A stretch of 64,000 nucleotides of DNA from Obrimoposthia wandeli. Taxonomy: Eukaryota. Position numbers and translations under genes: made by a program. The notes under the pieces were generated by a model, which saw only the letters and a program-made list of their open reading frames with translations, was not told the DNA's origin and did not search any database. The stretch lies in the NCBI GenBank assembly GCA_977020255.1, contig CDROCS010002749.1, positions 1-64,000 on the forward strand, in the 5' to 3' direction. Shown here one piece after another: positions 20,868-30,767 of this stretch (its first letter is position 1; the number at the start of each line of letters is the position of its first letter).

Positions 20868-21518
20868 ATGCAAACAATCTATAACTATGCACAAAGCATA
20901 GTTGCAACAAACGCAGATAAGAAAAAAAGAGATCGTACCAAAGCTGCTATTCAATTTGCGATGTGCCAATTATTGGAAGAAAAGCCGCTATCAACCATAA
21001 CTATTGCGGAGGTGTGCAGCGCTGCAAAAATCGCTCATGGCACTTTTTATATTTACTTCACTGATCGAGAAATGTTAGTTGCCCAGTTGTTGATTGGTTT
21101 TGTCGATTTTATTCAAAATACCATGCTGTTCCAATCGAGCGAAGAGCAAATAGATCCCGTGAAAAAAACCACGGCGGCCTATATAGAGCTGTTTGAGAAA
21201 AACACCGGTTTAATGAAATGCCTACTTAATCATCACGAGGATTTCACGGTACCGAGTGAGCAGTTCCATAAATTAAATGTTATTTGGGCAAAAATAGTGG
21301 TGAGTGCTGCAATTAAAGGAATATCAGAGAACCCTACTAATACAGATCCTGAGGAAGAAGAGCTGTTGCGTAGGGCGTTCGCGCTAGGGGGGATGGTAGA
21401 TCAATATTTAGCAACGGTTTATATCCATAAAGATCCGGTACTGAAAAATTTATCACAAGATAAACAAAAGGTGATTGAGACGCTCTCATTCATTTGGAAG
21501 CAGGGAATGGGTTTATGA
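20868..21518 (+). CDS. TetR/AcrR family transcriptional regulator
   Basis: HTH TITIAEVCSAAKIAHGTFYIYFTDRE. Confidence 0.9.
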   Translation: MQTIYNYAQSIVATNADKKKRDRTKAAIQFAMCQLLEEKPLSTITIAEVCSAAKIAHGTFYIYFTDREMLVAQLLIGFVDFIQNTMLFQSSEEQIDPVKKTTAAYIELFEKNTGLMKCLLNHHEDFTVPSEQFHKLNVIWAKIVVSAAIKGISENPTNTDPEEEELLRRAFALGGMVDQYLATVYIHKDPVLKNLSQDKQKVIETLSFIWKQGMGL

Positions 21519-22819
21519 CATTGCTTAAAAATACAATGCTATTATCGCAAGATGAAATTTCTATTAACCAGCAACTATCCTGGGAAAAGCAAAGCAAGTA
21601 TGTGCTAAATAATTCGCCTTTCTATCAAAATTTATGGAATGGCCTATTACCACCTAAAGATTTATGTGATTTGCCGAACTTGCCTTTATCTGATAAATCT
21701 CAATTACGTATTTCTCAAGAAAACTATCCCCCTTATGGTAATTATCTAGCTGCTCCACGATCCGCCGTGACACGCCATCACCGTACTTCTGGTACGACAG
21801 GACAGGCGATGAATTTGGCTTTATCTGCTCTGGATTGTGAAATAACCCAAGTTGTTGGCGGTCGTAGTCAGCAATCTGCAGGATTAACGCCAGATCACAC
21901 TGTTGTGCATTGTTTGAATTACCAAATGTGGATGGGCGGCGTAACAGATCATTTGACGCTAGAGCGGACAGGTGCAACGGTTGTGCCGTATGGCGTTGGG
22001 GGCACTGAAAAATTGATAGAAACAATTTTAGCCATTGGTATCAATGCAATATCCTGCACGCCATCTTACCCAGCAGTTTTAGAAAAAGTTCTTAAAGATA
22101 AATTTCCAAACCTATCGCCTAAAGATTTAGGCTTAAAGTTAGGGCTGTTTGGCGGCGAAGCCGGCCTTGATGATCCACTTTTGCGAGCAAAAATTCGTAA
22201 CACTTGGGGTATGGAACCGCGTAATGCTAATTATGGCGTATCTGATGTGCTTTCAAATTTCGCCGCTCAGTGTGAGCATGATACTAGCTTACATTTTCTA
22301 GCAGCCGATGTGTTGTATCCGGAATTAATTAATCCAGATAGCGGAGCACATGTAGCCATTAAGGCGGGTAATGAAGGTGAACTTGTGCTGACTCACCTAA
22401 AACGAGAGTGTCAGCCATTAGTGCGATTTAAATCAGGTGACATTATCACTATAGATGAAACAGATCCGTGTCAGTGTGGGCGCGGCGGATTTAGATTTAG
22501 GGTGGTTGGGCGCAGCGACGATATGATAGTTATTCGTGGCCTTAATATTTTTCCGACAATGGTCGCCGCTGTAATTAATGGGTTTGCTGATTTATCCGGA
22601 AACTACACAATTGTACTAGATAAACAGCCGCCATATGATTACTTGCCAGTACAGGTAGAGCTAGCACCCTTTAGCCAAGCTAGTACAAACTTAACTGCAA
22701 ACGTTGAGACAGCAATAAAAACCAAATTGGGTGCCAGTGCTAAAATTACTATTTTGCCCCCCAACAGTTTCCCTGTGACTGAGGGTAAAACCAAGCGAGT
22801 TGTGAGGACATATCAATGA
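21515..22819 (+). CDS. Phenylacetate-CoA ligase (PaaK)-like acyl-CoA ligase
   Basis: HHRTSGTTGQ AMP-binding loop, NYGVSD, PLVRFKSGD, GRSDDMIVIRGLNIFP. ATG 21515 overlaps the TetR stop (ATGA). Confidence 0.85.
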   Translation: MTLLKNTMLLSQDEISINQQLSWEKQSKYVLNNSPFYQNLWNGLLPPKDLCDLPNLPLSDKSQLRISQENYPPYGNYLAAPRSAVTRHHRTSGTTGQAMNLALSALDCEITQVVGGRSQQSAGLTPDHTVVHCLNYQMWMGGVTDHLTLERTGATVVPYGVGGTEKLIETILAIGINAISCTPSYPAVLEKVLKDKFPNLSPKDLGLKLGLFGGEAGLDDPLLRAKIRNTWGMEPRNANYGVSDVLSNFAAQCEHDTSLHFLAADVLYPELINPDSGAHVAIKAGNEGELVLTHLKRECQPLVRFKSGDIITIDETDPCQCGRGGFRFRVVGRSDDMIVIRGLNIFPTMVAAVINGFADLSGNYTIVLDKQPPYDYLPVQVELAPFSQASTNLTANVETAIKTKLGASAKITILPPNSFPVTEGKTKRVVRTYQ

Positions 22820-23580
22820 AAAATTTCACCTACGAATGCGTGCAATCTACTTTAAATGACAAGGGGGTGCGCACTATCGCTTTAAACCGTCCCGCTAGTT
22901 TGAATGCAATGAATCGGCAATTAATTGAAGATGTATCAACCGCTTTTGATGATGCGAATAAAGATCCGAAAACTTTAGTAATCATCTTTACGGGCGTAGG
23001 ACGAGCGTTTTGTGCCGGTGATGATCGTGAGCAGCATGTTCACCCAGAAAACGAAGCACAAGCACGCAGCTTAGTAGATGCAATCCAGCGGGCTACACAG
23101 GCAATTACGTTTGGTGCAAAGCCTGTTGTCGGCGCAATTAACGGGTGGGCAGTTGGCGGTGGGTTTGAATGGGCGATTAACTGTGATTTTCCAATCTGGG
23201 GAGAAAGCGCCAAGGCGTTTTTTCCAGAAGTCTCTTTGAATTTGTTTGTTACTGGTGGCGTCACATCCTTGCTACCGGCTTTAGTTGGATTGAATAAGGC
23301 GCGGGAAATGTTGATGCTTGGCGAAAGATATAACGCAAATGAGCTTTTAAAAGCAGGGGTTGCGTGGCGAGTTTCAACAGATGAGAAACTCTTGGAGGAT
23401 GCGAGAAACGTTGCACAAAAGCTCGCTTTACTCCCTCCTTTATCATTGCACGCCATGAAGCGTGTTCTAAATCAAACCGCATCAAGTAATATCAATGCAG
23501 CGATTTCGTTGGAGAGTGAAGCAACCATCAGCGGATTTATGGATCCAAAAACAACCCAGTTATTAACCGATTTTTCTTGA
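22816..23580 (+). CDS. Enoyl-CoA hydratase/isomerase (crotonase) family protein
   Basis: LNRPASLNAMN, RAFCAGDD, VGAINGWAVGGGFEWAINCD, FFPEVSL. ATGA overlap with the ligase stop. Confidence 0.88.
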   Translation: MKNFTYECVQSTLNDKGVRTIALNRPASLNAMNRQLIEDVSTAFDDANKDPKTLVIIFTGVGRAFCAGDDREQHVHPENEAQARSLVDAIQRATQAITFGAKPVVGAINGWAVGGGFEWAINCDFPIWGESAKAFFPEVSLNLFVTGGVTSLLPALVGLNKAREMLMLGERYNANELLKAGVAWRVSTDEKLLEDARNVAQKLALLPPLSLHAMKRVLNQTASSNINAAISLESEATISGFMDPKTTQLLTDFS

Positions 23581-23981
23581 AAAATAACAAGTTAAAATCT
23601 CGATGACTAAAGCATAGCTTGAGCTTTCAATAAAGCGACGTAAAAGATCGATTAAACTCCTCAAGCATTACAGAGCCGTATGATAAATGCTCCATATAAA
23701 CGGATTATTCAATTAATTTCGATAATGAACCATTAAGGTGATAGTCTCAAATTGAATTATGAATCGGATGCATTGAACGCTATATTTTCACGGTGACAGC
23801 TTTGAGTTCCCGTATCAGATTATCGTTAAGCTAAGATAAGCTCATGAAAAGTGTCCACCTGCTTAGATCAATTTTTATCTCGCTTTTTTTAGAATACATA
23901 TATAAATTAAAATATTGGAGGTATAATTAATTAAGATTGTATATAAATCGACCACCAACCAATAGTCATATGAAGGGACTA

Positions 23982-24536
23982 ATGATGTCTGCACAAGATA
24001 CAAAAATTGAAAAAAATACAGATGAGCAAGTGATTGAGCAAAAGGCCCCATCTGAACTCGATCAGTTAAGAAATATCGTTTTTGGTGCAGCCAAAGAAGA
24101 CTTAGAATCACAGCTCAGTGAATTACGAAGTGACGTGCAGCAACAATTCAAAGAGGCTGCACAGCTACAAGAACAGCAGATAGAGGCACTAAAAATCGCC
24201 CTAGATGAAAATGTAATTAAACTTGACCAGCGCATTACAGTAGTGGATACACAGCACGAAAATAGATCAGCTGAGTTATCCGAATACGCTGATCAGATTG
24301 CTGCTGAAGTAGAATCAAACGATACGAATAGCAGACAACAGGATGATGAAATTCGTAAAACCCTCGATTTTGAAGTAGATAGCTTGACCAAAAAATTTAC
24401 CAAGCAACATAATCAAACTATCGATTTACTTAATCAAGTTAAAAAGGATCTTAATAGCTCCAAGACTGATAGAAAAACACTGGCTAAACTTCTTGCTACC
24501 GTCGCAAGTAATCTTGAAACCGATGAAGACAACTAA
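23982..24536 (+). CDS. Hypothetical all-helical/coiled-coil protein; first gene of the small-GTPase operon
   Basis: Heptad-like Q/E/L-rich sequence with ELDQLRNIVFG and KTDRKTLAKLLATVA motifs. RBS AAGGGA precedes ATG 23982. Confidence 0.8.
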   Translation: MMSAQDTKIEKNTDEQVIEQKAPSELDQLRNIVFGAAKEDLESQLSELRSDVQQQFKEAAQLQEQQIEALKIALDENVIKLDQRITVVDTQHENRSAELSEYADQIAAEVESNDTNSRQQDDEIRKTLDFEVDSLTKKFTKQHNQTIDLLNQVKKDLNSSKTDRKTLAKLLATVASNLETDEDN

Positions 24537-24544
24537 TATTGCCA

Positions 24545-26518
24545 ATGGAAACTAATAATACTTCCACTAGTGATGACGCCTTAGCATTAGAATCTTTTAA
24601 GAAAATTATTCTAGGTAAGAATAGTCAGCATATTAGAGATGTCATAGAGGAAGATGCAAGAGAATTGGTTAGTAAGGTTTTAACGGAAGCTCTTCATGAT
24701 AGGGAGAAAGCTGATGGTACTGTAAGCCAAATTCTTACACCCGTAGTAGAAATGGCAGTAGAAAAGTCAGTCACCGATAATAAAGACTTGTTTATCGGTT
24801 ATTTATATCCTTTAGTCGGCGGCTTAGTTAGAAAATCTGTTAGTTCTTTTTTAGCAAGTTTAGTTGAACAAACTAACCAGTTGTTAGAAAGTAGTTTTAC
24901 AATAAAGGGAATCTATTGGCGGTTTAAAGCCTGGCAAGCAGGCCTTTCATATTCACAATATGTCATTAAACAGAATTTTTCCTTTAGAGTAGAGCAAATA
25001 CTGCTGATTCATACCGAAACAAGTATGTTGCTCAATACTGTGATCAAGGATAAAACACAAGCGACTGACGGCGATATGGTTTCTGCCATGTTAAGTGCTA
25101 TCAATGATTTTGTTGGTGACTCTTTCGAACAAGAAAATACAGATAAGCAAAGCTTAGATGAAATCAAAACAGACGATTTTACCTTGCTCATCAAGCAGGG
25201 ACCACAGGCGATGCTCGTCGCTGCTATTACGGGAAACCCACCCGCTGATATTGGGGAAAAACTACAACTAAATCTTGAAACCATTCATAAGATTTATGGC
25301 GCAGAACTCCATGATTTTGATGGGGATTCGCAGGCCTTTGCGAATACTGATCAACAATTGAATAAATGCTTAGTTGAGCGGCAAAAGCAATCAGAGGTTA
25401 CTGGTAAGAAACGACCTTGGTTAGCGATGATTTTACTGTTGGTTTTTGCTATCGTATGTGGCTATTTCTTTTCAAAGCAATGGCTACTGGATTCGAAAAT
25501 TCAGCAAATCAATGCGCTTGATTCAGTGCCTGGAATTGTTTTATTAGATACACATGCATGCTCAGAAAATATTTGTATTGAATTAATGCGCGACCCCTTG
25601 GCAGAACCCGCATTATCCTGGCTTAAAAAGGCAAACTTAACTGGCACTGGCATTGATATAATTGAACACACTTATCGTTCAGCAGATACTAAATTAATAG
25701 GAAATATTCAGCTTAGTAAGATAAAGTCTCTCACTAGCGCGCCGGGCATTATTTTACTTGATGCCTTCATATGTGAAGAAAAAATTTGTATTGAGTTATT
25801 GCGTGATCCCATTGCTGAATCTGCATTATTATGGTTAAAAAAAGCCAACTTAGCCGGTACTGAGTTAGTTGTTAGTGAACGTGCCTATCGATCTTTAGAT
25901 GAAAATTTAATCGATATGCGCCTTTACTTGTTGATTAAAGGCTACCCTGGATTATCGTATGCTAATGGAGTTTTTCAGGGCCAGCTAAAACAATCTGTAC
26001 TCACCAAGTTTAAACGAGTGGTGAGTGCATTACCTGATAAATTGGATTTAACCTTATTGTTCTCGAAGCTTGAAATAATCCCTAGGACATTATCATCAGA
26101 TTATAAAATTAATCGAGCCCTATTAGATCAGAGTATTACAAAATTACAAAACACTACTATAATCTTTGATGAAGGCGAAAGTCATTTGCGCCCTTTCTCT
26201 ATCAAGAAACTAAAACTTGTTAGTGAAAATATTACTGAAATACTCGATCTTGCTGAGCTACTGGATTACAACATTGAAATTATTGTGATGGGGGCGAGCA
26301 GTTCAACAGGTAATAAAGCTTTTAACGAGCAACTGAGCCGTAAACGAGCAGCCTCAGTCAGAAAGAACCTCATTAAGAACAAGTTAAATAAAGATATAGT
26401 GCAGGCGATTGGACTTGGAAGTATCAATGAAAAAGCTCGCCGTGTTATGTTCTCCGTGGTTAAACTTACTGCGCAAAACAGCGATTTGGATGTAGATATA
26501 ATGGCGCCGATAAGATGA
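24545..26518 (+). CDS. Membrane protein: helical N-terminus, putative longin/roadblock-like domain, single TM, duplicated periplasmic repeat, OmpA-like C-terminal domain
   Basis: TM WLAMILLLVFAIVCGYFF. OmpA-like motif IVMGASSSTGNKAFNEQLSRKRAASVRKNL...GLG...ARRVMF. Start is ATG 24545 or TTG 24539. Confidence 0.8.
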   Translation: METNNTSTSDDALALESFKKIILGKNSQHIRDVIEEDARELVSKVLTEALHDREKADGTVSQILTPVVEMAVEKSVTDNKDLFIGYLYPLVGGLVRKSVSSFLASLVEQTNQLLESSFTIKGIYWRFKAWQAGLSYSQYVIKQNFSFRVEQILLIHTETSMLLNTVIKDKTQATDGDMVSAMLSAINDFVGDSFEQENTDKQSLDEIKTDDFTLLIKQGPQAMLVAAITGNPPADIGEKLQLNLETIHKIYGAELHDFDGDSQAFANTDQQLNKCLVERQKQSEVTGKKRPWLAMILLLVFAIVCGYFFSKQWLLDSKIQQINALDSVPGIVLLDTHACSENICIELMRDPLAEPALSWLKKANLTGTGIDIIEHTYRSADTKLIGNIQLSKIKSLTSAPGIILLDAFICEEKICIELLRDPIAESALLWLKKANLAGTELVVSERAYRSLDENLIDMRLYLLIKGYPGLSYANGVFQGQLKQSVLTKFKRVVSALPDKLDLTLLFSKLEIIPRTLSSDYKINRALLDQSITKLQNTTIIFDEGESHLRPFSIKKLKLVSENITEILDLAELLDYNIEIIVMGASSSTGNKAFNEQLSRKRAASVRKNLIKNKLNKDIVQAIGLGSINEKARRVMFSVVKLTAQNSDLDVDIMAPIR

Positions 26519-27009
26519 TTAATAAGAAAATTTGTATGCTGGGCCCTTCTGCTGTTGGAAAAACAAGTTTAGTAAAGCGTTATGTGAATGGTATTTTTTC
26601 TGATAAATATCTAACTAGTATTGGGGTGAAAATAGATAAAAAGGCGATCTCATTAGACGGCGAAAATATTCAGCTTATGCTTTGGGACATTGAAGGTGTA
26701 GATCGCTACTGCGGATTTAACCCTAAGTTTATTAGAGGCGCTGCGGTTGCTATTATAGTCGTTGACCAATCTCGAATACAGTCCTTACAAGATGGTTTTG
26801 AAATTAGCCGTTTGGTTAAAGCTGAAAAGGATATTCCTATTATTTTGGTTATTAATAAAAGCGATCTAAAGCCTGCTGATGATTGGCACTGTCTATTAGA
26901 AAATGAAGATCAATCTCTATTCCAAGCGCAATATTTCACAAGTGCCAAATTGAACAGCGGTGTTGAAGAAATGTTTTTTGATGCGGCTAGAATATCAATT
27001 AATAAGTAA
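26515..27009 (+). CDS. Ras/Rab-like small GTPase (prokaryotic Rup-type)
   Basis: 164 aa with G1 GPSAVGKT, G2 region YLTSIG, G3 LWDIEG, G4 NKSD, G5 TSAK. ATGA overlap with the OmpA-protein stop. Confidence 0.92.
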   Translation: MINKKICMLGPSAVGKTSLVKRYVNGIFSDKYLTSIGVKIDKKAISLDGENIQLMLWDIEGVDRYCGFNPKFIRGAAVAIIVVDQSRIQSLQDGFEISRLVKAEKDIPIILVINKSDLKPADDWHCLLENEDQSLFQAQYFTSAKLNSGVEEMFFDAARISINK

Positions 27010-27032: not shown

Positions 27033-29159
27033 ATGCAGGCTTCACTACTTCAGAAATTAGGGATACTCGATTGCGCCGTGTTAGAAAAGAAATCGGACGC
27101 TACATTTAGCCTAATTCATTCAAATAAAGCATGGCTAAGCGCTATTTTGCCAGACGGTTTTGATAGTGGAGTTATTCTTGAGAATGGTATTTCGGATTAT
27201 TTAAATGACTTCTTATACGATGCCATTCCGTTTTGGGATAGGAATATCGATGGAAAGATAAATTCAGGAATTTGGACTGAGCAGACCTCTAGCGGACTGT
27301 GGAGGTTAGAAGCCTCTGCGATAACAAATGATAATGCACATTATCTTGTTATTATTAATATCGCCAATGAGCACAATAGCCGCCAAAGATTGCTGCAGGT
27401 TGCTAGAGAATTATTGGTTTCAAATGATCAAATATTAGAGCAGCACCAATTAATGCATGCACGTATATCATCACTAACATATAGCCCTGATAGTGAATCT
27501 GCCCCACACACTGTGATAGAAGAGTTAATAAGACATACTGAATTTGGTATTGCTGTCGTAGATGTTAATATGCAACCGCTAGAGCAAAATCCGGCTCTGT
27601 TTCAGATGTTTGAGCTTAAAAGTGATACTAAAGCGCAACCAATTAGTATCATATTAGATCTTTGCCAGCGTCAATTTCCTGAATTTACAAGAATATTCTC
27701 AAGACAAGAGAAATGGACTGGTGAGTTGTATTGGGTCAAGCCTGATGCCATAAGTCGCTGGCTTCAACTGACTATTTGTCCAGTTAAGAGTGATACCAAT
27801 GAACTCTCAAATTGGCTGTTTTTGTTAACGGATATTAGCCGCGAAAAGTATCTTCAACAAAGTAATGAGAAGCTCATTTATTTCGATGTAATGACTGATT
27901 TACCCAATAGGAAATACTTTTGGCATAGCTTGGAAAGTGCCATAGATAAAAATTCTTCATTTTTTGTACTACGTATGAATATCAAGCATGTACAGCGTAT
28001 CAATGAAGCTTATGGTTACTCTATTGGTGACGAAGTTATTATAGAAGTTGTGTCACGGCTAAAATTATTTATTGACAATGGCTCCATTTTTGCTCGGCTT
28101 GGCGGTAATGAATTCGCGATGATTTTCTATTTGTCAGAGCAAAAAGAATGTGAACATGTTGCAAAACAGCTGATTGAAATAGCATGTAAGCCTATAAGGA
28201 TTTCCAGCCAATTACAGTTTCAAATTAAACTCGACATAGGTGTAGCACATTACCCAAATGATGAAGTTTGTGCAGAAGAACTCATTCGATATGCGGATTT
28301 AGCGGCTTTTTTTGGTAAGGAGAAAGAGAAAAATAGTATTCACTTTTACTCAGAAAATCTTAAAAATCAATCGATATTGCGTATTGAATTAGAAGCATCT
28401 TTGCGCAATGCTATAGAGCAGAAGCAATTTGAACTCTATTTACAGCCAATATATGATCTTAATACAGGCGTAGTCATCAAAGCGGAAGCACTGATTCGCT
28501 GGAACAAACCGGGTGTTGGATTAGTTGGACCTGATGAGTTTATCCATATAGCTGAAGAAACGGGTTTAATCGTCGCAATTGGGCAGTGGGTTATTGATGA
28601 GTCTATTCGGTTGCTTGAAATATTACACAATCAAAATAGACACATTACCTTAGCAATCAATTTATCTCCGGTACAAATTCAAGATCAACACTTATTAAGT
28701 ACTATCAAAAATAGTGTTTCCCACAGTAAAATTAATGTCGCCTCTTTTCTTCAATTAGAGTTAACGGAAGGCGTGTTAATCGAAGATTTTGACAAAATAC
28801 AAGTCTTCTTAAGCGAAGTGAGAAAACTTGGCATTACCACTGCTATCGATGATTTTGGTACGGGGTATAGTTCTCTATCATATTTACAGAAGCTACCAAT
28901 TGATCACTTAAAAATTGATCGCTCATTTATTCAAGCATTAAATATCGATAATAGCGAGAATGCAATTGTGCTTGCTATTATCGCGATGGCAGAAAGCTTA
29001 AAACTTGGAGTGATAGCAGAAGGCGTAGAAAATGAGATGCAACAAGAGTTTTTAAGAATTAATAATTGCCAGTCTGCACAGGGGTATTTATTTAGCCGGC
29101 CCCTACCATTTGCTCATTTCATTGAATCATCTAGCTTGTGGCCTCTAACGATTAGTTAG
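27033..29159 (+). CDS. PAS/GGDEF(degenerate)/EAL c-di-GMP phosphodiesterase with an unrecognised N-terminal input domain
   Basis: EAL motifs intact (KAEALIRW, NLS, ELTE, DDFGTGYSSLSYL, KIDRSF, EGVE, QGY). The GGDEF signature reads GGNEF (28101-28115). Confidence 0.9.
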   Translation: MQASLLQKLGILDCAVLEKKSDATFSLIHSNKAWLSAILPDGFDSGVILENGISDYLNDFLYDAIPFWDRNIDGKINSGIWTEQTSSGLWRLEASAITNDNAHYLVIINIANEHNSRQRLLQVARELLVSNDQILEQHQLMHARISSLTYSPDSESAPHTVIEELIRHTEFGIAVVDVNMQPLEQNPALFQMFELKSDTKAQPISIILDLCQRQFPEFTRIFSRQEKWTGELYWVKPDAISRWLQLTICPVKSDTNELSNWLFLLTDISREKYLQQSNEKLIYFDVMTDLPNRKYFWHSLESAIDKNSSFFVLRMNIKHVQRINEAYGYSIGDEVIIEVVSRLKLFIDNGSIFARLGGNEFAMIFYLSEQKECEHVAKQLIEIACKPIRISSQLQFQIKLDIGVAHYPNDEVCAEELIRYADLAAFFGKEKEKNSIHFYSENLKNQSILRIELEASLRNAIEQKQFELYLQPIYDLNTGVVIKAEALIRWNKPGVGLVGPDEFIHIAEETGLIVAIGQWVIDESIRLLEILHNQNRHITLAINLSPVQIQDQHLLSTIKNSVSHSKINVASFLQLELTEGVLIEDFDKIQVFLSEVRKLGITTAIDDFGTGYSSLSYLQKLPIDHLKIDRSFIQALNIDNSENAIVLAIIAMAESLKLGVIAEGVENEMQQEFLRINNCQSAQGYLFSRPLPFAHFIESSSLWPLTIS

Positions 29160-29417: not shown

Positions 29418-30767
29418 ATGCAACTAACAGAAAAAGCATTACTAACTAACGCTTTACTTATTTCAATTTCTACCCCAGAGCTTAAAGGTGATGAGGCAAT
29501 TGAATCATTAGCTGAACTTGCCCGTTTAGTGACGACACTTGGGTTTAAAGTGGTTGGCTCCCAATCGCAAAAGCTGAGTTCAACTAAAAGAGTTAATGTG
29601 CTAGGTTTAGGAAAGCTTGCAGAGATTGCGCAGCTTACCGGTAACCAGGGGGTGCTAGAAGGTTCAGAAGAGTATGAAGACCTCACTAACGTAGATATTA
29701 CCGGAATACCTTCAACTATACCGTCTGATAATCTTTCGTTTGGCTGTGCTGATGTGGTTATATTTGATTGTGATTTAAGCCCATCTCAGCTACGCAATGT
29801 CGAGAATCAATTAGGCGTAGAGGTATTTGACCGTACTGGCGTTATTATTGAAATATTTAGTCGCCATGCCCGTACTAAAACAGCGAAGCTACAAGTTGAA
29901 ATAGCTCGCCTTAATTATGTAGCACCAAGGCTTCGTGAATCATCATGTGGTGATAAAGAACGCCAAATGGGTAAAGGGGCTGGTGAAACAACGCTAGAGC
30001 TAAACCGACGTAAAGTACGTGATCAATTAGCAGAACTTAGGCACGAATTAATTAGTGTTCAAGGTGAGATGAAAGGGCGACGTACACAGCGCTCTGAGCT
30101 TTTTTGTGTCGCTTTGGTGGGATATACCAATGCGGGCAAGTCATCAATGATGCGCGCGATTACCGGTAGTAATGTCGAAGGTGAAAACAAGCTTTTCGCG
30201 ACACTTGATACCACCGTTCGCGCGTTGTATCCCGAAACGCAACCGCGAGTGTTGGTCTCAGACACTGTCGGTTTTATTAAAAAATTACCGCACGATTTAG
30301 TTGCCTCATTTCATTCAACTTTAGCAGAAGCACACGATGCTTCATTGTTGTTATATGTGGTTGATGCCTCTGACCCTTCGTTTCGTGCACAATTAGATGT
30401 TGTGCACCAAGTATTAGGAGAAGTCGGGGTAGCGGATAGTAAAAAGTTATTGGTACTCAATAAATCAGACCTGCTTAGCACTGCGCAAAAACAAGCACTA
30501 ATGGAAGAGTTCCCAGATGCTATGCTGACATCTGCTAATGATCCTGATGATGTAAGTAAATTGCACCAATATATTGTTGGTGTTGCGCAGGACGAGATGA
30601 TTGAAGATGAAATCATTGTTCCTTATACAGCTAAAGGTATCATAGGTGAAATTCGTTCGAGTATGAGTGTTACTAAGGAAGAATATGAATACGATCATAT
30701 TAAGCTCACAGTGCGCTCAAACTCAATTAACTTAGCAAGGCTTAAAAAACGGATGCTGAATGTATAA
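29418..30767 (+). CDS. hflX: Ribosome-splitting GTPase HflX (stand-alone copy)
   Basis: DRTGVIIEIFSRHARTKTAKLQVEIARL, GAGETTLELNRR, ALVGYTNAGKSS, LFATLDTT, DTVGFI. Confidence 0.92.
   Translation: MQLTEKALLTNALLISISTPELKGDEAIESLAELARLVTTLGFKVVGSQSQKLSSTKRVNVLGLGKLAEIAQLTGNQGVLEGSEEYEDLTNVDITGIPSTIPSDNLSFGCADVVIFDCDLSPSQLRNVENQLGVEVFDRTGVIIEIFSRHARTKTAKLQVEIARLNYVAPRLRESSCGDKERQMGKGAGETTLELNRRKVRDQLAELRHELISVQGEMKGRRTQRSELFCVALVGYTNAGKSSMMRAITGSNVEGENKLFATLDTTVRALYPETQPRVLVSDTVGFIKKLPHDLVASFHSTLAEAHDASLLLYVVDASDPSFRAQLDVVHQVLGEVGVADSKKLLVLNKSDLLSTAQKQALMEEFPDAMLTSANDPDDVSKLHQYIVGVAQDEMIEDEIIVPYTAKGIIGEIRSSMSVTKEEYEYDHIKLTVRSNSINLARLKKRMLNV

What the first reader, a model, noticed from the sequence alone, without database searches (positions are those of the whole stretch)
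24986..25372. Cytoplasmic domain of the OmpA-family protein looks like a longin/roadblock (profilin-like) GTPase-regulator fold
Seen: before the TM helix the sequence reads RVEQILLIHTETSMLL...DGDMVSAMLSAINDFVGDSF...LDEIKTDDFTLLIKQGPQAMLVAAITGNPP...LQLNLETIHKIY, a pattern of beta-beta-alpha-beta-beta-beta-alpha. Established: that topology is the longin fold, and longin/roadblock domains act as GEFs or GAPs for small GTPases (Mon1-Ccz1, TRAPP, MglB). Inference: this is the cognate GEF/GAP of the GTPase encoded immediately downstream, tethered to peptidoglycan through the TM and OmpA-like domains, so it would work as a receptor-like GTPase regulator in a bacterium.
Basis: inference. Interest (0 to 1): 0.78.

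Follow-up and report, generated by a model that had tools for sequence, protein, structure and literature searches.

The report
Bacterial membrane-anchored longin domain beside Rab-like GTPase
The cytoplasmic part of this cell-wall-anchored membrane protein is confidently predicted to fold like the eukaryotic "longin" domains that switch Rab GTPases on or off. It sits in a known but untested bacterial GTPase operon, so it is the obvious candidate regulator of the GTPase encoded next door.

Summary
[quoted passage not shown] In a Foldseek search and an exhaustive aligner search of 48,161 PDB chains, every top-50 hit is a longin or roadblock domain. The best are Sec22b and VAMP7 (Z about 13, rmsd 2.5 A, 121 of 128 residues). 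The fit is to the longin topology, not the MglB-type roadblock.

The protein runs: helical region, longin domain, one transmembrane helix, two periplasmic repeats, OmpA-like peptidoglycan-binding domain. Its stop codon overlaps the start of a Rab-like GTPase that lacks the catalytic Gln.

The four-gene set (coiled-coil protein, this protein, GTPase, output enzyme) is conserved across many phyla. It is the "Group 1 Rup" neighbourhood described in 2014, where this domain was left as unknown. The scan had already reached that verdict for a second, paralogous module elsewhere in this genome (note s1-224211).

New here:
- the longin assignment itself;
- conservation concentrated on helix alpha1, the usual GTPase-docking face;
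- a PAS-like fold for the output protein's N-terminal domain.

GEF or GAP activity is inference only; no tool available here could test it. No Pfam, NCBIfam or PDB sequence match supports family membership.

The parts
23937..24536 (+). Coiled-coil partner protein (199-aa ORF; likely true start is the ATG at 23982, residue M16). It has two conserved end motifs, ELDQLRxILFG and KTDRKTLAKLL, around a variable middle.
   Evidence: No Pfam or NCBIfam hit. A homolog lies directly upstream in 66 loci. Conservation profile. Called a predicted coiled-coil cytoplasmic protein in PMC4316618.
24539..24976 (+). Cytoplasmic helical region of the membrane protein (residues 1-146). Invariant P91, R98 and R128; near-invariant G94, K99, N113 and W127. 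Start codon is TTG at 24539 or ATG at 24545.
   Evidence: AF2 helices 9-146, with lower pLDDT (62-76) around residues 100-120. Invariant columns from the 101-sequence alignment A2. Always co-aligned with the longin part in the representative search. Start context.
24977..25384 (+). Longin-type domain (residues 147-282): beta1 147-158, beta2 164-169, alpha1 178-196, beta3-5 208-232, alpha2 236-258, alpha3 265-275.
   Evidence: AF2 model m4a32027af8df. Foldseek top 50 are all longin/roadblock. VIA-align gives Z 13.5, rmsd 2.5 A, 121/128 residues to Sec22b longin. The exhaustive search of 48,161 chains gives only longin/roadblock in its top 50. Alpha1 and beta1 are the most conserved elements.
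25415..25483 (+). Single transmembrane helix (about residues 293-315), preceded by the basic stretch KKR.
   Evidence: It is the only Kyte-Doolittle peak of 1.6 or more. It falls at the same position (about residue 292) in 120 homologs.
25496..25900 (+). Two tandem periplasmic repeats of about 64 aa (about residues 320-383 and 391-454). No family assignment.
   Evidence: BLASTP of one against the other: 58% identity over 64 aa, E 7e-28. No Pfam hit. Most homologs are about 587 aa, about 72 residues shorter, which suggests a single copy; repeat number in them was not checked.
26165..26431 (+). OmpA-like peptidoglycan-binding domain (residues 543-631).
   Evidence: PF00691, E 2.6e-9, 37.7 bits against a cut-off of 27.2. 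Sub-threshold matches to several NCBIfam OmpA-type lipoprotein models.
26515..27009 (+). Group 1 Rup small GTPase (164 aa). It is Rab/Ras-like: G1 GPSAVGKT, switch I YLTSIGVKIDKK, G3 WDIEGV (no catalytic Gln), NKSD, TSAK.
   Evidence: Pfam Ras E 8e-26 and Roc E 1e-23. Motif conservation in 76 orthologs. Its ATG overlaps the upstream stop codon as ATGA.
27033..27527 (+). N-terminal PAS-like domain plus long signalling helix of the output protein (residues 1-165). Holds the near-invariant Q122 and R125.
   Evidence: Alignment A3 of 53 sequences. AF2 pLDDT 75. Only PAS/LOV matches: Foldseek E 6e-4, best VIA Z 8.1. The same domain is attached to different outputs in 57 loci.
27528..29159 (+). Remainder of the output protein: PAS_9, a GGDEF domain with a degenerate GGNEF motif, and an EAL domain with intact motifs. 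Likely a c-di-GMP phosphodiesterase.
   Evidence: Pfam EAL E 2e-67, GGDEF E 7e-28, PAS_9 E 4e-5. Motifs read from the translation.

Best explanation
This is the membrane input component of a Group 1 Rup small-GTPase signalling module.

The N-terminal 292 residues are cytoplasmic: a conserved helical region followed by a longin-type domain that is joined to the transmembrane helix by only about 10 residues. The periplasmic part (two repeats plus an OmpA-like domain) holds the protein on peptidoglycan.

Inferred steps:
1. The longin domain, probably dimerised through beta3 and alpha1, offers its strongly conserved alpha1 face as the docking platform for the Rab-like GTPase encoded immediately downstream.
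2. Together with the helical region and/or the upstream coiled-coil protein, it sets the GTPase's nucleotide state in response to the state of the envelope. Exchange factor (GEF) is more likely than GAP.
3. GTP-bound Rup then acts on the PAS-like N-terminal domain of the GGDEF(degenerate)-EAL enzyme and changes c-di-GMP turnover.

Shown here: the fold, the topology elements, the gene coupling and the conservation pattern. Inferred: binding, dimerisation, direction of signalling, and GEF versus GAP.
For: - Fold: AF2 pLDDT 79-98 across residues 141-290. All top-50 Foldseek hits are longin/roadblock GTPase-platform proteins, including TRAPP, Mon1-Ccz1, Fuzzy, Ragulator and MglB. VIA-align gives Z 13.5, rmsd 2.5 A, 121/128 residues to Sec22b, and Z 13.0-13.1 to Fuzzy, a subunit of the Rab23 exchange factor. 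The search of 48,161 chains that does not use Foldseek gives the same families.
- Specificity control: the same pipeline classifies the neighbouring output N-domain as PAS/LOV, not longin.
- Genetic coupling: ATGA stop/start overlap. The order coiled-coil, this protein, GTPase, output is kept in Gammaproteobacteria, Acidobacteriota, Gemmatimonadota, Cyanobacteria, Bacteroidales and others. The GTPase is present in 77 of the 82 loci with a called ORF for this protein.
- Conservation: alpha1 (mean 0.78) and beta1 (0.75) are the most conserved elements, against 0.42 and 0.40 for the bottom helices alpha2 and alpha3. Alpha1 is the dimer and GTPase-binding face of longin/roadblock platforms (PMC3747258).
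- The GTPase lacks the G3 Gln in the orthologs, so it needs partner proteins for its cycle (PMC4316618).
Against: - There is no direct evidence of binding, exchange or GAP activity, and no complex prediction was possible with these tools.
- No sequence-level membership: Pfam, NCBIfam and a PDB profile search are all negative.
- No invariant Arg lies inside the longin domain, as longin GAPs would have.
- Two loci (L052, L077) keep this protein and the output protein but have no GTPase nearby.
- Some longin domains (SNAREs, adaptor sigma/mu subunits) do not regulate GTPases at all, and these are among the best structural matches.
- The 2014 paper assigns the GAP role to the output protein, not this one.
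Confidence: 0.55

Rival explanations
1. The longin module is the GAP or co-GAP, not the exchange factor. It would position the GTPase's own residues as MglB does, or work with a residue supplied in trans: the invariant R98 or R128 of its helical region, or Q122 of the output protein. The membrane protein would then switch the GTPase off.
For: Longin/roadblock GAPs exist (MglB, GATOR1, FLCN-FNIP, C9orf72-SMCR8; PMC3747258, PMC12290439). The GTPase lacks the catalytic Gln. Invariant Arg residues lie just upstream of the longin domain.
Against: No invariant Arg lies within the longin domain itself. The P-loop position equivalent to Ras G12 is Phe in 43 of 76 orthologs, which by analogy with Ras would hinder a classical arginine finger (inference). 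A receptor-proximal component is more often an activator.
Confidence: 0.2
2. The longin domain is only an anchor, scaffold or effector site. It would bind Rup (or the output enzyme) to localise the module at the inner membrane under the cell wall without changing the nucleotide state, as the SRX longin domain binds SR-beta-GTP. Alternatively the GTPase regulates the membrane protein rather than the reverse.
For: PMC3747258 stresses that longin/roadblock domains are platforms rather than catalysts, and that SRX-type and Rag-type cases show no regulation. L052 and L077 pair this protein directly with the output protein, with no GTPase gene present.
Against: The extreme conservation of alpha1 and of the helical motifs (P91, R98, R128) across phyla suggests more than tethering. 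The GTPase needs some GEF and GAP, and the conserved operon holds few other candidates.
Confidence: 0.17
3. The resemblance is only at fold level. The domain would be a small-ligand sensor or dimerisation module of the broader profilin/PAS/GAF-like alpha/beta sandwich class, with no direct contact to the GTPase.
For: No sequence-profile link to any longin or roadblock family. The best matches by Z are SNARE longin domains, which are not GTPase regulators.
Against: No PAS, GAF or profilin chain appears in the top 50 of 48,161 chains, whereas a true PAS-like neighbour is recognised as such. Synteny with a Ras-superfamily GTPase is tight.
Confidence: 0.08

Closest known systems
Group 1 Rup GTPase neighbourhood (Wuichet and Sogaard-Andersen 2014, PMC4316618)
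   Same: It is the same four genes: a coiled-coil protein; a protein with an unknown conserved domain, one inner-membrane helix and a C-terminal OmpA domain; a Rup GTPase without the G3 Gln; and a c-di-GMP enzyme or kinase output whose N-terminal region carries a conserved Gln. All four features were found here.
   Different: The paper left the domain as 'Unc' (no Pfam match) and proposed the output protein as the GAP. Here the domain is assigned a longin-type fold and the output N-domain a PAS-like fold. The family proved far larger (3402 cluster representatives, at least 574 species loci) than the 71 Rup sequences known then.
Eukaryotic longin-domain Rab exchange factors (TRAPP Bet5/Trs23, Mon1-Ccz1, Fuzzy-Inturned/CPLANE, BLOC-3)
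   Same: [quoted passage not shown] Three family members give weak Pfam hits to Fuz_longin_1 (best E 0.014).
   Different: Sequence identity is only 8-14% and there is no significant profile match. Here there is a single longin domain rather than a hetero-dimer or tri-longin array. It is fused to a helical region, a TM helix and a periplasmic peptidoglycan anchor. The GTPase has no lipid anchor, and activity is untested.
MglB/MglA and the actinobacterial conservon (CvnA-D / Mfp) roadblock-GTPase systems
   Same: These are also bacterial, with a regulator of the same superfamily encoded beside a small Ras-like GTPase. The conservon likewise has a membrane sensor and was the analogy drawn in PMC4316618. 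Structural match Z 10.3-11.0.
   Different: Those are free-standing roadblock domains with an N-terminal helix, and they pair with MglA-family GTPases. Here the alignments skip the roadblock N-terminal helix and stop near residue 259. The topology is longin, the domain is part of the membrane protein, and the GTPase is of the Rup (Rab/Ras-like) family, for which the 2014 survey found no MglB coupling (0 of 121).
MotB/Pal-type OmpA-like peptidoglycan anchors
   Same: A C-terminal PF00691 domain sits in the periplasm behind a single inner-membrane helix.
   Different: There is a large conserved cytoplasmic signalling module in place of a short N-terminus, and the domain scores are far below every NCBIfam equivalog cut-off.

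Membership tests
Longin domain (fold level) | [quoted passage not shown] | tested here: met
   The DSSP element order in the AF2 model matches. Longin chains align over model residues 149-282 from their first to last residue, e.g. Sec22b 121/128 residues, Z 13.5, rmsd 2.5 A.
Longin domain (sequence families in Pfam, e.g. Longin, Fuz_longin_1, Sedlin/Sybindin) | A significant match to a curated profile. | tested here: not met
   No hit for the window protein at E up to 10. Of 101 family members, only 3 give sub-threshold hits to PF19036 Fuz_longin_1 (best E 0.014). The PDB profile search found nothing below E 0.19.
Longin/roadblock GTPase platform | Dimerisation through beta3 and alpha1, with the GTPase bound on the alpha1 face. 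| not testable with these tools
   Only single-chain prediction was available. Indirect support: alpha1 is the most conserved element (0.78) and the bottom helices the least (0.40-0.42).
Roadblock/LC7 (MglB-like) | [quoted passage not shown] | tested here: not met
   Roadblock chains align only from their residue 16-27 onward and only to model residues 148-259, at lower Z (10.3-11.1) than longins. There is no PF03259 hit.
Longin-type GAPs (FLCN, Nprl2, SMCR8) | A conserved catalytic arginine finger within the longin domain. | tested here: not met
   No invariant or near-invariant Arg lies in residues 147-282 of the 101-sequence alignment. The invariant Arg residues are R98 and R128, in the preceding helices.
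Group 1 Rup system | A conserved neighbourhood: coiled-coil protein, unknown-domain/TM/OmpA protein, Rup GTPase, and a signalling output. | tested here: met
   This gene order is in the window and across the 84 fetched loci: GTPase in 77 loci, coiled-coil in 66, output N-domain in 57.
Group 1 Rup system | The GTPase has Ras-like G1-G5 motifs but lacks the G3 glutamine, and the output N-terminal region carries a conserved Gln. | tested here: met
   G3 is WDIEGV in the window. In 76 orthologs the commonest residues there are E, I and V, and G1, G4 and G5 are invariant. Q122 is near-invariant in 53 output N-domains.
OmpA-like peptidoglycan-binding domain | A match to PF00691 above the gathering score, located outside the cytoplasm. 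| tested here: met
   37.7 bits against a cut-off of 27.2, residues 543-631, C-terminal to the only TM helix. Peptidoglycan binding itself was not tested.
Guanine nucleotide exchange factor / GAP (function) | Acceleration of GDP release or of GTP hydrolysis on the cognate GTPase. | not testable with these tools
   This needs biochemistry. It is inferred only from fold and synteny.

The most novel reading that the evidence does not exclude
The pairing of a Rab/Ras-like GTPase with a longin-domain regulator may not be a eukaryotic or Asgard invention. On this reading it exists, homologously, as a widespread bacterial receptor, longin-GEF, GTPase and effector cascade wired to the cell wall and to c-di-GMP, cAMP or kinase outputs. 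The Rab-longin exchange-factor partnership would then predate eukaryotes or have a bacterial source, and bacteria would possess a GPCR-like, envelope-sensing small-GTPase pathway.
Probability: 0.15. Interest if true: 0.85.

Novelty: new variant of a known kind. Interest (0 to 1): 0.6.

Why it matters
Rup1 GTPases are the bacterial group that clusters with eukaryotic Rab/Ras/Rho/Ran (PMC4316618; bioRxiv 10.1101/2024.02.28.582541). Their partners have had no assigned fold and no experiment.

A 2013 review states that prokaryotes have no longin domains (PMC3747258). A 2024 paper says the roadblock/longin families are thought to be of archaeal origin, with roadblock proteins only sporadic in bacteria (PMC10933270). 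A large bacterial family (thousands of sequence clusters, many phyla) with longin topology, hard-wired to a Rab-like GTPase, bears on that view.

It also gives the Rup system a concrete hypothesis with named residues and a named surface to mutate. If correct, it defines a new type of envelope-to-second-messenger signalling in bacteria. If the domain turns out to be only a scaffold, the result is still a useful annotation for an unnamed domain family.

Tried and rejected
- Sequence-family assignment of residues 1-300 and 138-287: Pfam and NCBIfam gave nothing. Scanning all 101 family members gave only noise, plus 3 weak Fuz_longin_1 hits.
- A profile search of PDB sequences with alignment A2 found nothing below E 0.19.
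- I tested whether the output protein's N-terminal domain is a second longin/roadblock that could form a heterodimeric platform. Rejected: its model matches only PAS/LOV domains.
- I tested whether the coiled-coil protein is a paralog of the helical region. There is no BLASTP alignment. A shared short LRxhhhG-like N-terminal motif seen by eye is not significant.
- I looked for a degraded GTPase gene in L052 and L077. None was found.
- Periplasmic repeats against Pfam (BON or other): no hit.
- Profile-profile comparison against roadblock or longin alignments was not done, because no tool-derived reference alignment of those families was available and I did not type sequences from memory.
- A complex (multimer) prediction was not possible, because only single natural chains can be submitted.
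- Literature searches for a longin assignment of the Rup partner, or for any experiment on Rup systems, found only the 2014 paper. The library omits most subscription journals.
Full report
**What is there.** The finding lies in ORF 24539-26518 (+), 659 aa.
- Pfam finds one domain, OmpA (PF00691, residues 543-631, E 2.6e-9), and nothing in the first 300 residues. NCBIfam likewise.
- The next gene (26515-27009) is a 164-aa Ras/Roc-type GTPase (E 8e-26). Its ATG overlaps the stop codon of the membrane protein as ATGA.
- Upstream is a 199-aa protein with no family (23937-24536). Downstream is a 708-aa PAS-GGDEF-EAL protein (27033-29159).

**Family and context.** The N-terminal 292 residues have 285 word-search relatives. 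All of the 120 listed carry a TM helix near residue 292, and nearly all a C-terminal OmpA domain.
- An exhaustive search finds 3402 cluster representatives at E up to 1e-3 and 1000 at 1e-30. In the 150 listed, nearly all matches span about residues 17-285, so the helices and the alpha/beta part are one evolutionary unit.
They come from Gammaproteobacteria, Acidobacteriota, Gemmatimonadota, Cyanobacteria, Desulfomonile, Bacteroidales, Binatia and a Heliobacteriaceae MAG.
- I called ORFs in 84 fetched loci and searched them with the four window proteins. 82 loci had a called ORF for this protein. 77 loci have the GTPase next to it, nearly always directly downstream on the same strand. 66 have the coiled-coil gene upstream. 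57 have a homolog of the output protein's N-terminal 165 residues, attached to different outputs. Precomputed Pfam for three other homolog loci shows PAS-GGDEF-EAL, class III cyclase and histidine kinase outputs.
- Of the five loci with this protein's ORF but no GTPase ORF, three end at a contig edge. Two (L052, L077) truly lack it.

**Already described.** This gene set is the "Group 1 Rup" neighbourhood of Wuichet and Sogaard-Andersen 2014 (PMC4316618).
- I confirmed the diagnostic features. G3 is WDIEGV in the window, and the commonest residues at that position in 76 orthologs are E, I and V. G1, NKxD and TSAK are invariant. Q122 is near-invariant in 53 output N-domains.
- The scan's own notes say a second, paralogous module exists elsewhere in this genome and was judged the same way. 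I had reached the 2014 paper independently before seeing that note.

**The fold.** AlphaFold2 on a 101-sequence alignment (32-72% identity to the query; A2) gave mean pLDDT 86.5, with 79-98 per 10-residue block across residues 141-290. The elements are helices 9-146, then E147-158, E164-169, H178-196, E208-210, E215-220, E224-232, H236-258 and H265-275.
- Foldseek against the PDB: all top-50 hits are longin or roadblock proteins (TRAPP Trs23/Bet5, Mon1-Ccz1, AP sigma, COPI zeta, Asgard Roadblock, Ragulator, MglB, GATOR1, Fuzzy). E is 1e-4 to 3e-3 and probability 1.0.
- VIA-align re-scoring: Sec22b longin Z 13.5, rmsd 2.5 A, 121 of 128 residues. VAMP7, Fuzzy, Trs23 and Ykt6 give Z 12.6-13.3 over model residues 147-283.
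- An exhaustive alignment to 48,161 chains that does not rely on Foldseek: again only this superfamily in the top 50, and no PAS, GAF or profilin chain.
- These Z values exceed the tool's stated background for non-helical models (about 7-8), and the matches cover the whole domain.

- Longin chains align from their first residue through both C-terminal helices (model residues 149-282).
- MglB, LAMTOR and Asgard roadblock chains align only from their residue 16-27 onward and stop at model residue 251-259, with lower Z of 10.3-11.1.
- The model therefore has the longin arrangement.

**Internal control.** I modelled the N-terminal 165 residues of the output protein from 53 orthologs (A3; pLDDT 75) to see whether it could be a partner longin domain. 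It is not.
- Foldseek and the exhaustive search return only PAS/LOV domains: short LOV proteins at E 6e-4, and best Z 8.1 to a PYP domain.
- Q122 and R125 sit in the long C-terminal helix (residues 111-149).
- So the pipeline separates the two related sandwich folds, and the output protein looks like a PAS-plus-signalling-helix input to its enzyme domains. The Z values here are only middling, so this assignment is less secure than the longin one.

**Where conservation lies.** In alignment A2, the most conserved elements are helix alpha1 (residues 178-196, consensus D-x-D-L-V-S-x-M-L-T-A-I-x-D-F-V-x-D-S-F; mean 0.78) and beta1 (0.75). The two bottom-face helices are the least conserved (0.42 and 0.40).
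- In longin/roadblock platforms, beta3 and alpha1 form the dimer interface, and the alpha1 face binds the GTPase (PMC3747258).
- The pattern is therefore what a platform role predicts. This is inference, not proof.
- There is no invariant Arg inside the longin domain. The invariant R98 (in a conserved L-Y-P-x-x-G-x-x-x-R-K-S-V motif) and R128 lie in the preceding helices. Their role is unexplained.

**Most likely mechanism.**
- Shown: a protein with one predicted TM helix and an OmpA-like domain C-terminal to it, so an N-in, peptidoglycan-tethered topology is inferred. Its longin-type domain ends about 10 residues before the membrane. It is co-translated with a Rab-like GTPase that cannot hydrolyse GTP with a Gln of its own. 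The operon's output is an EAL-type c-di-GMP enzyme with a degenerate GGDEF motif (GGNEF, read).
- Inferred: the longin domain dimerises. It docks the GTPase on alpha1 and, with the helical region and/or the coiled-coil protein, controls its nucleotide state according to a periplasmic or cell-wall cue. GTP-bound Rup then acts on the PAS-like domain of the output enzyme.
- My estimates: direct regulator or platform of the GTPase about 0.55-0.6, within which GEF is likelier than GAP; GAP or co-GAP 0.2; pure anchor or effector site 0.17; unrelated sensor or dimerisation module 0.08.

**Novelty and limits.** The operon is known. The fold assignment for its "unknown" domain appears new within the searchable literature, but that library lacks most subscription journals.
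- Membership in any longin or roadblock sequence family is not supported. The claim is at fold level and rests on a predicted structure.
- GEF or GAP function is untested.

Noticed in passing
window 25496-25900: The periplasmic region holds a tandem duplication of a 64-aa unit (58% identity, E 7e-28) with no Pfam match. Most homologs are about 587 aa, about 72 residues shorter than this protein, which suggests a single copy; the Marinomonas proteins are 723 aa. A distant homolog (P0218) carries a faint BON hit in this region.
   Followed up: partly
window 27033-29159: The output enzyme has a degenerate GGDEF motif (RLGGNEF) but intact EAL motifs (EALIR, DDFGTGYSS, EGVE). It is therefore probably a c-di-GMP phosphodiesterase rather than a cyclase. 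This was read from the translation only.
   Followed up: no
L058:4735-5175 and L081:4611-5087: In two Acidobacteriota loci the PAS-like output N-domain occurs as a free-standing 146-158-aa protein upstream of the coiled-coil gene. This shows it is a separable module.
   Followed up: no
L052:5944-9627 and L077:5404-9085: Two gammaproteobacterial loci have the longin-OmpA protein followed directly by a 617-aa output protein, with no GTPase gene or remnant. Either the GTPase is encoded elsewhere or the two proteins can work without it.
   Followed up: partly
L002:2786-4544: In one MAG the protein is split into a 323-aa gene (helices, longin domain, TM helix) and a separate 282-aa OmpA gene that overlaps it slightly. 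This could be a frameshift or a real split.
   Followed up: no
window 24803-24841 (residues 89-101): The motif L-Y-P-x-x-G-x-x-x-R-K-S-V (P91 and R98 invariant; G94 and K99 near-invariant) sits in a moderately hydrophobic stretch that is modelled as a helix at lower confidence. Its role is unexplained; it could be a membrane-associated or catalytic element.
   Followed up: no
window 23937-24536: The coiled-coil protein has two conserved end motifs, ELDQLRxILFG (R45, F49, G50) and KTDRKTLAKLL (K176, D178, R179), around a variable middle. The conserved Met at residue 16 suggests the true start is 23982. The membrane protein's own N-terminus has a similar-looking LRxLLLG motif, but BLASTP finds no alignment.
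   Followed up: partly
window 26515-27009: The P-loop position equivalent to Ras Gly12 is Ser in the window and Phe in 43 of 76 orthologs. Arg87 (in D-x-T-R) is invariant. Both may bear on how hydrolysis is activated.
   Followed up: no
window 20868-23580 and 29418-30767: By eye from the translations, the flanking genes look like a TetR-type regulator, a phenylacetate-CoA-ligase-like enzyme and an enoyl-CoA hydratase upstream, and an HflX-type GTPase downstream. They appear unrelated to the module.
   Followed up: no
another piece of the same genome (note s1-224211): The scan's notes report a second, paralogous four-gene Rup module in this genome. Whether its membrane protein has the same longin domain was not checked here.
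   Followed up: no
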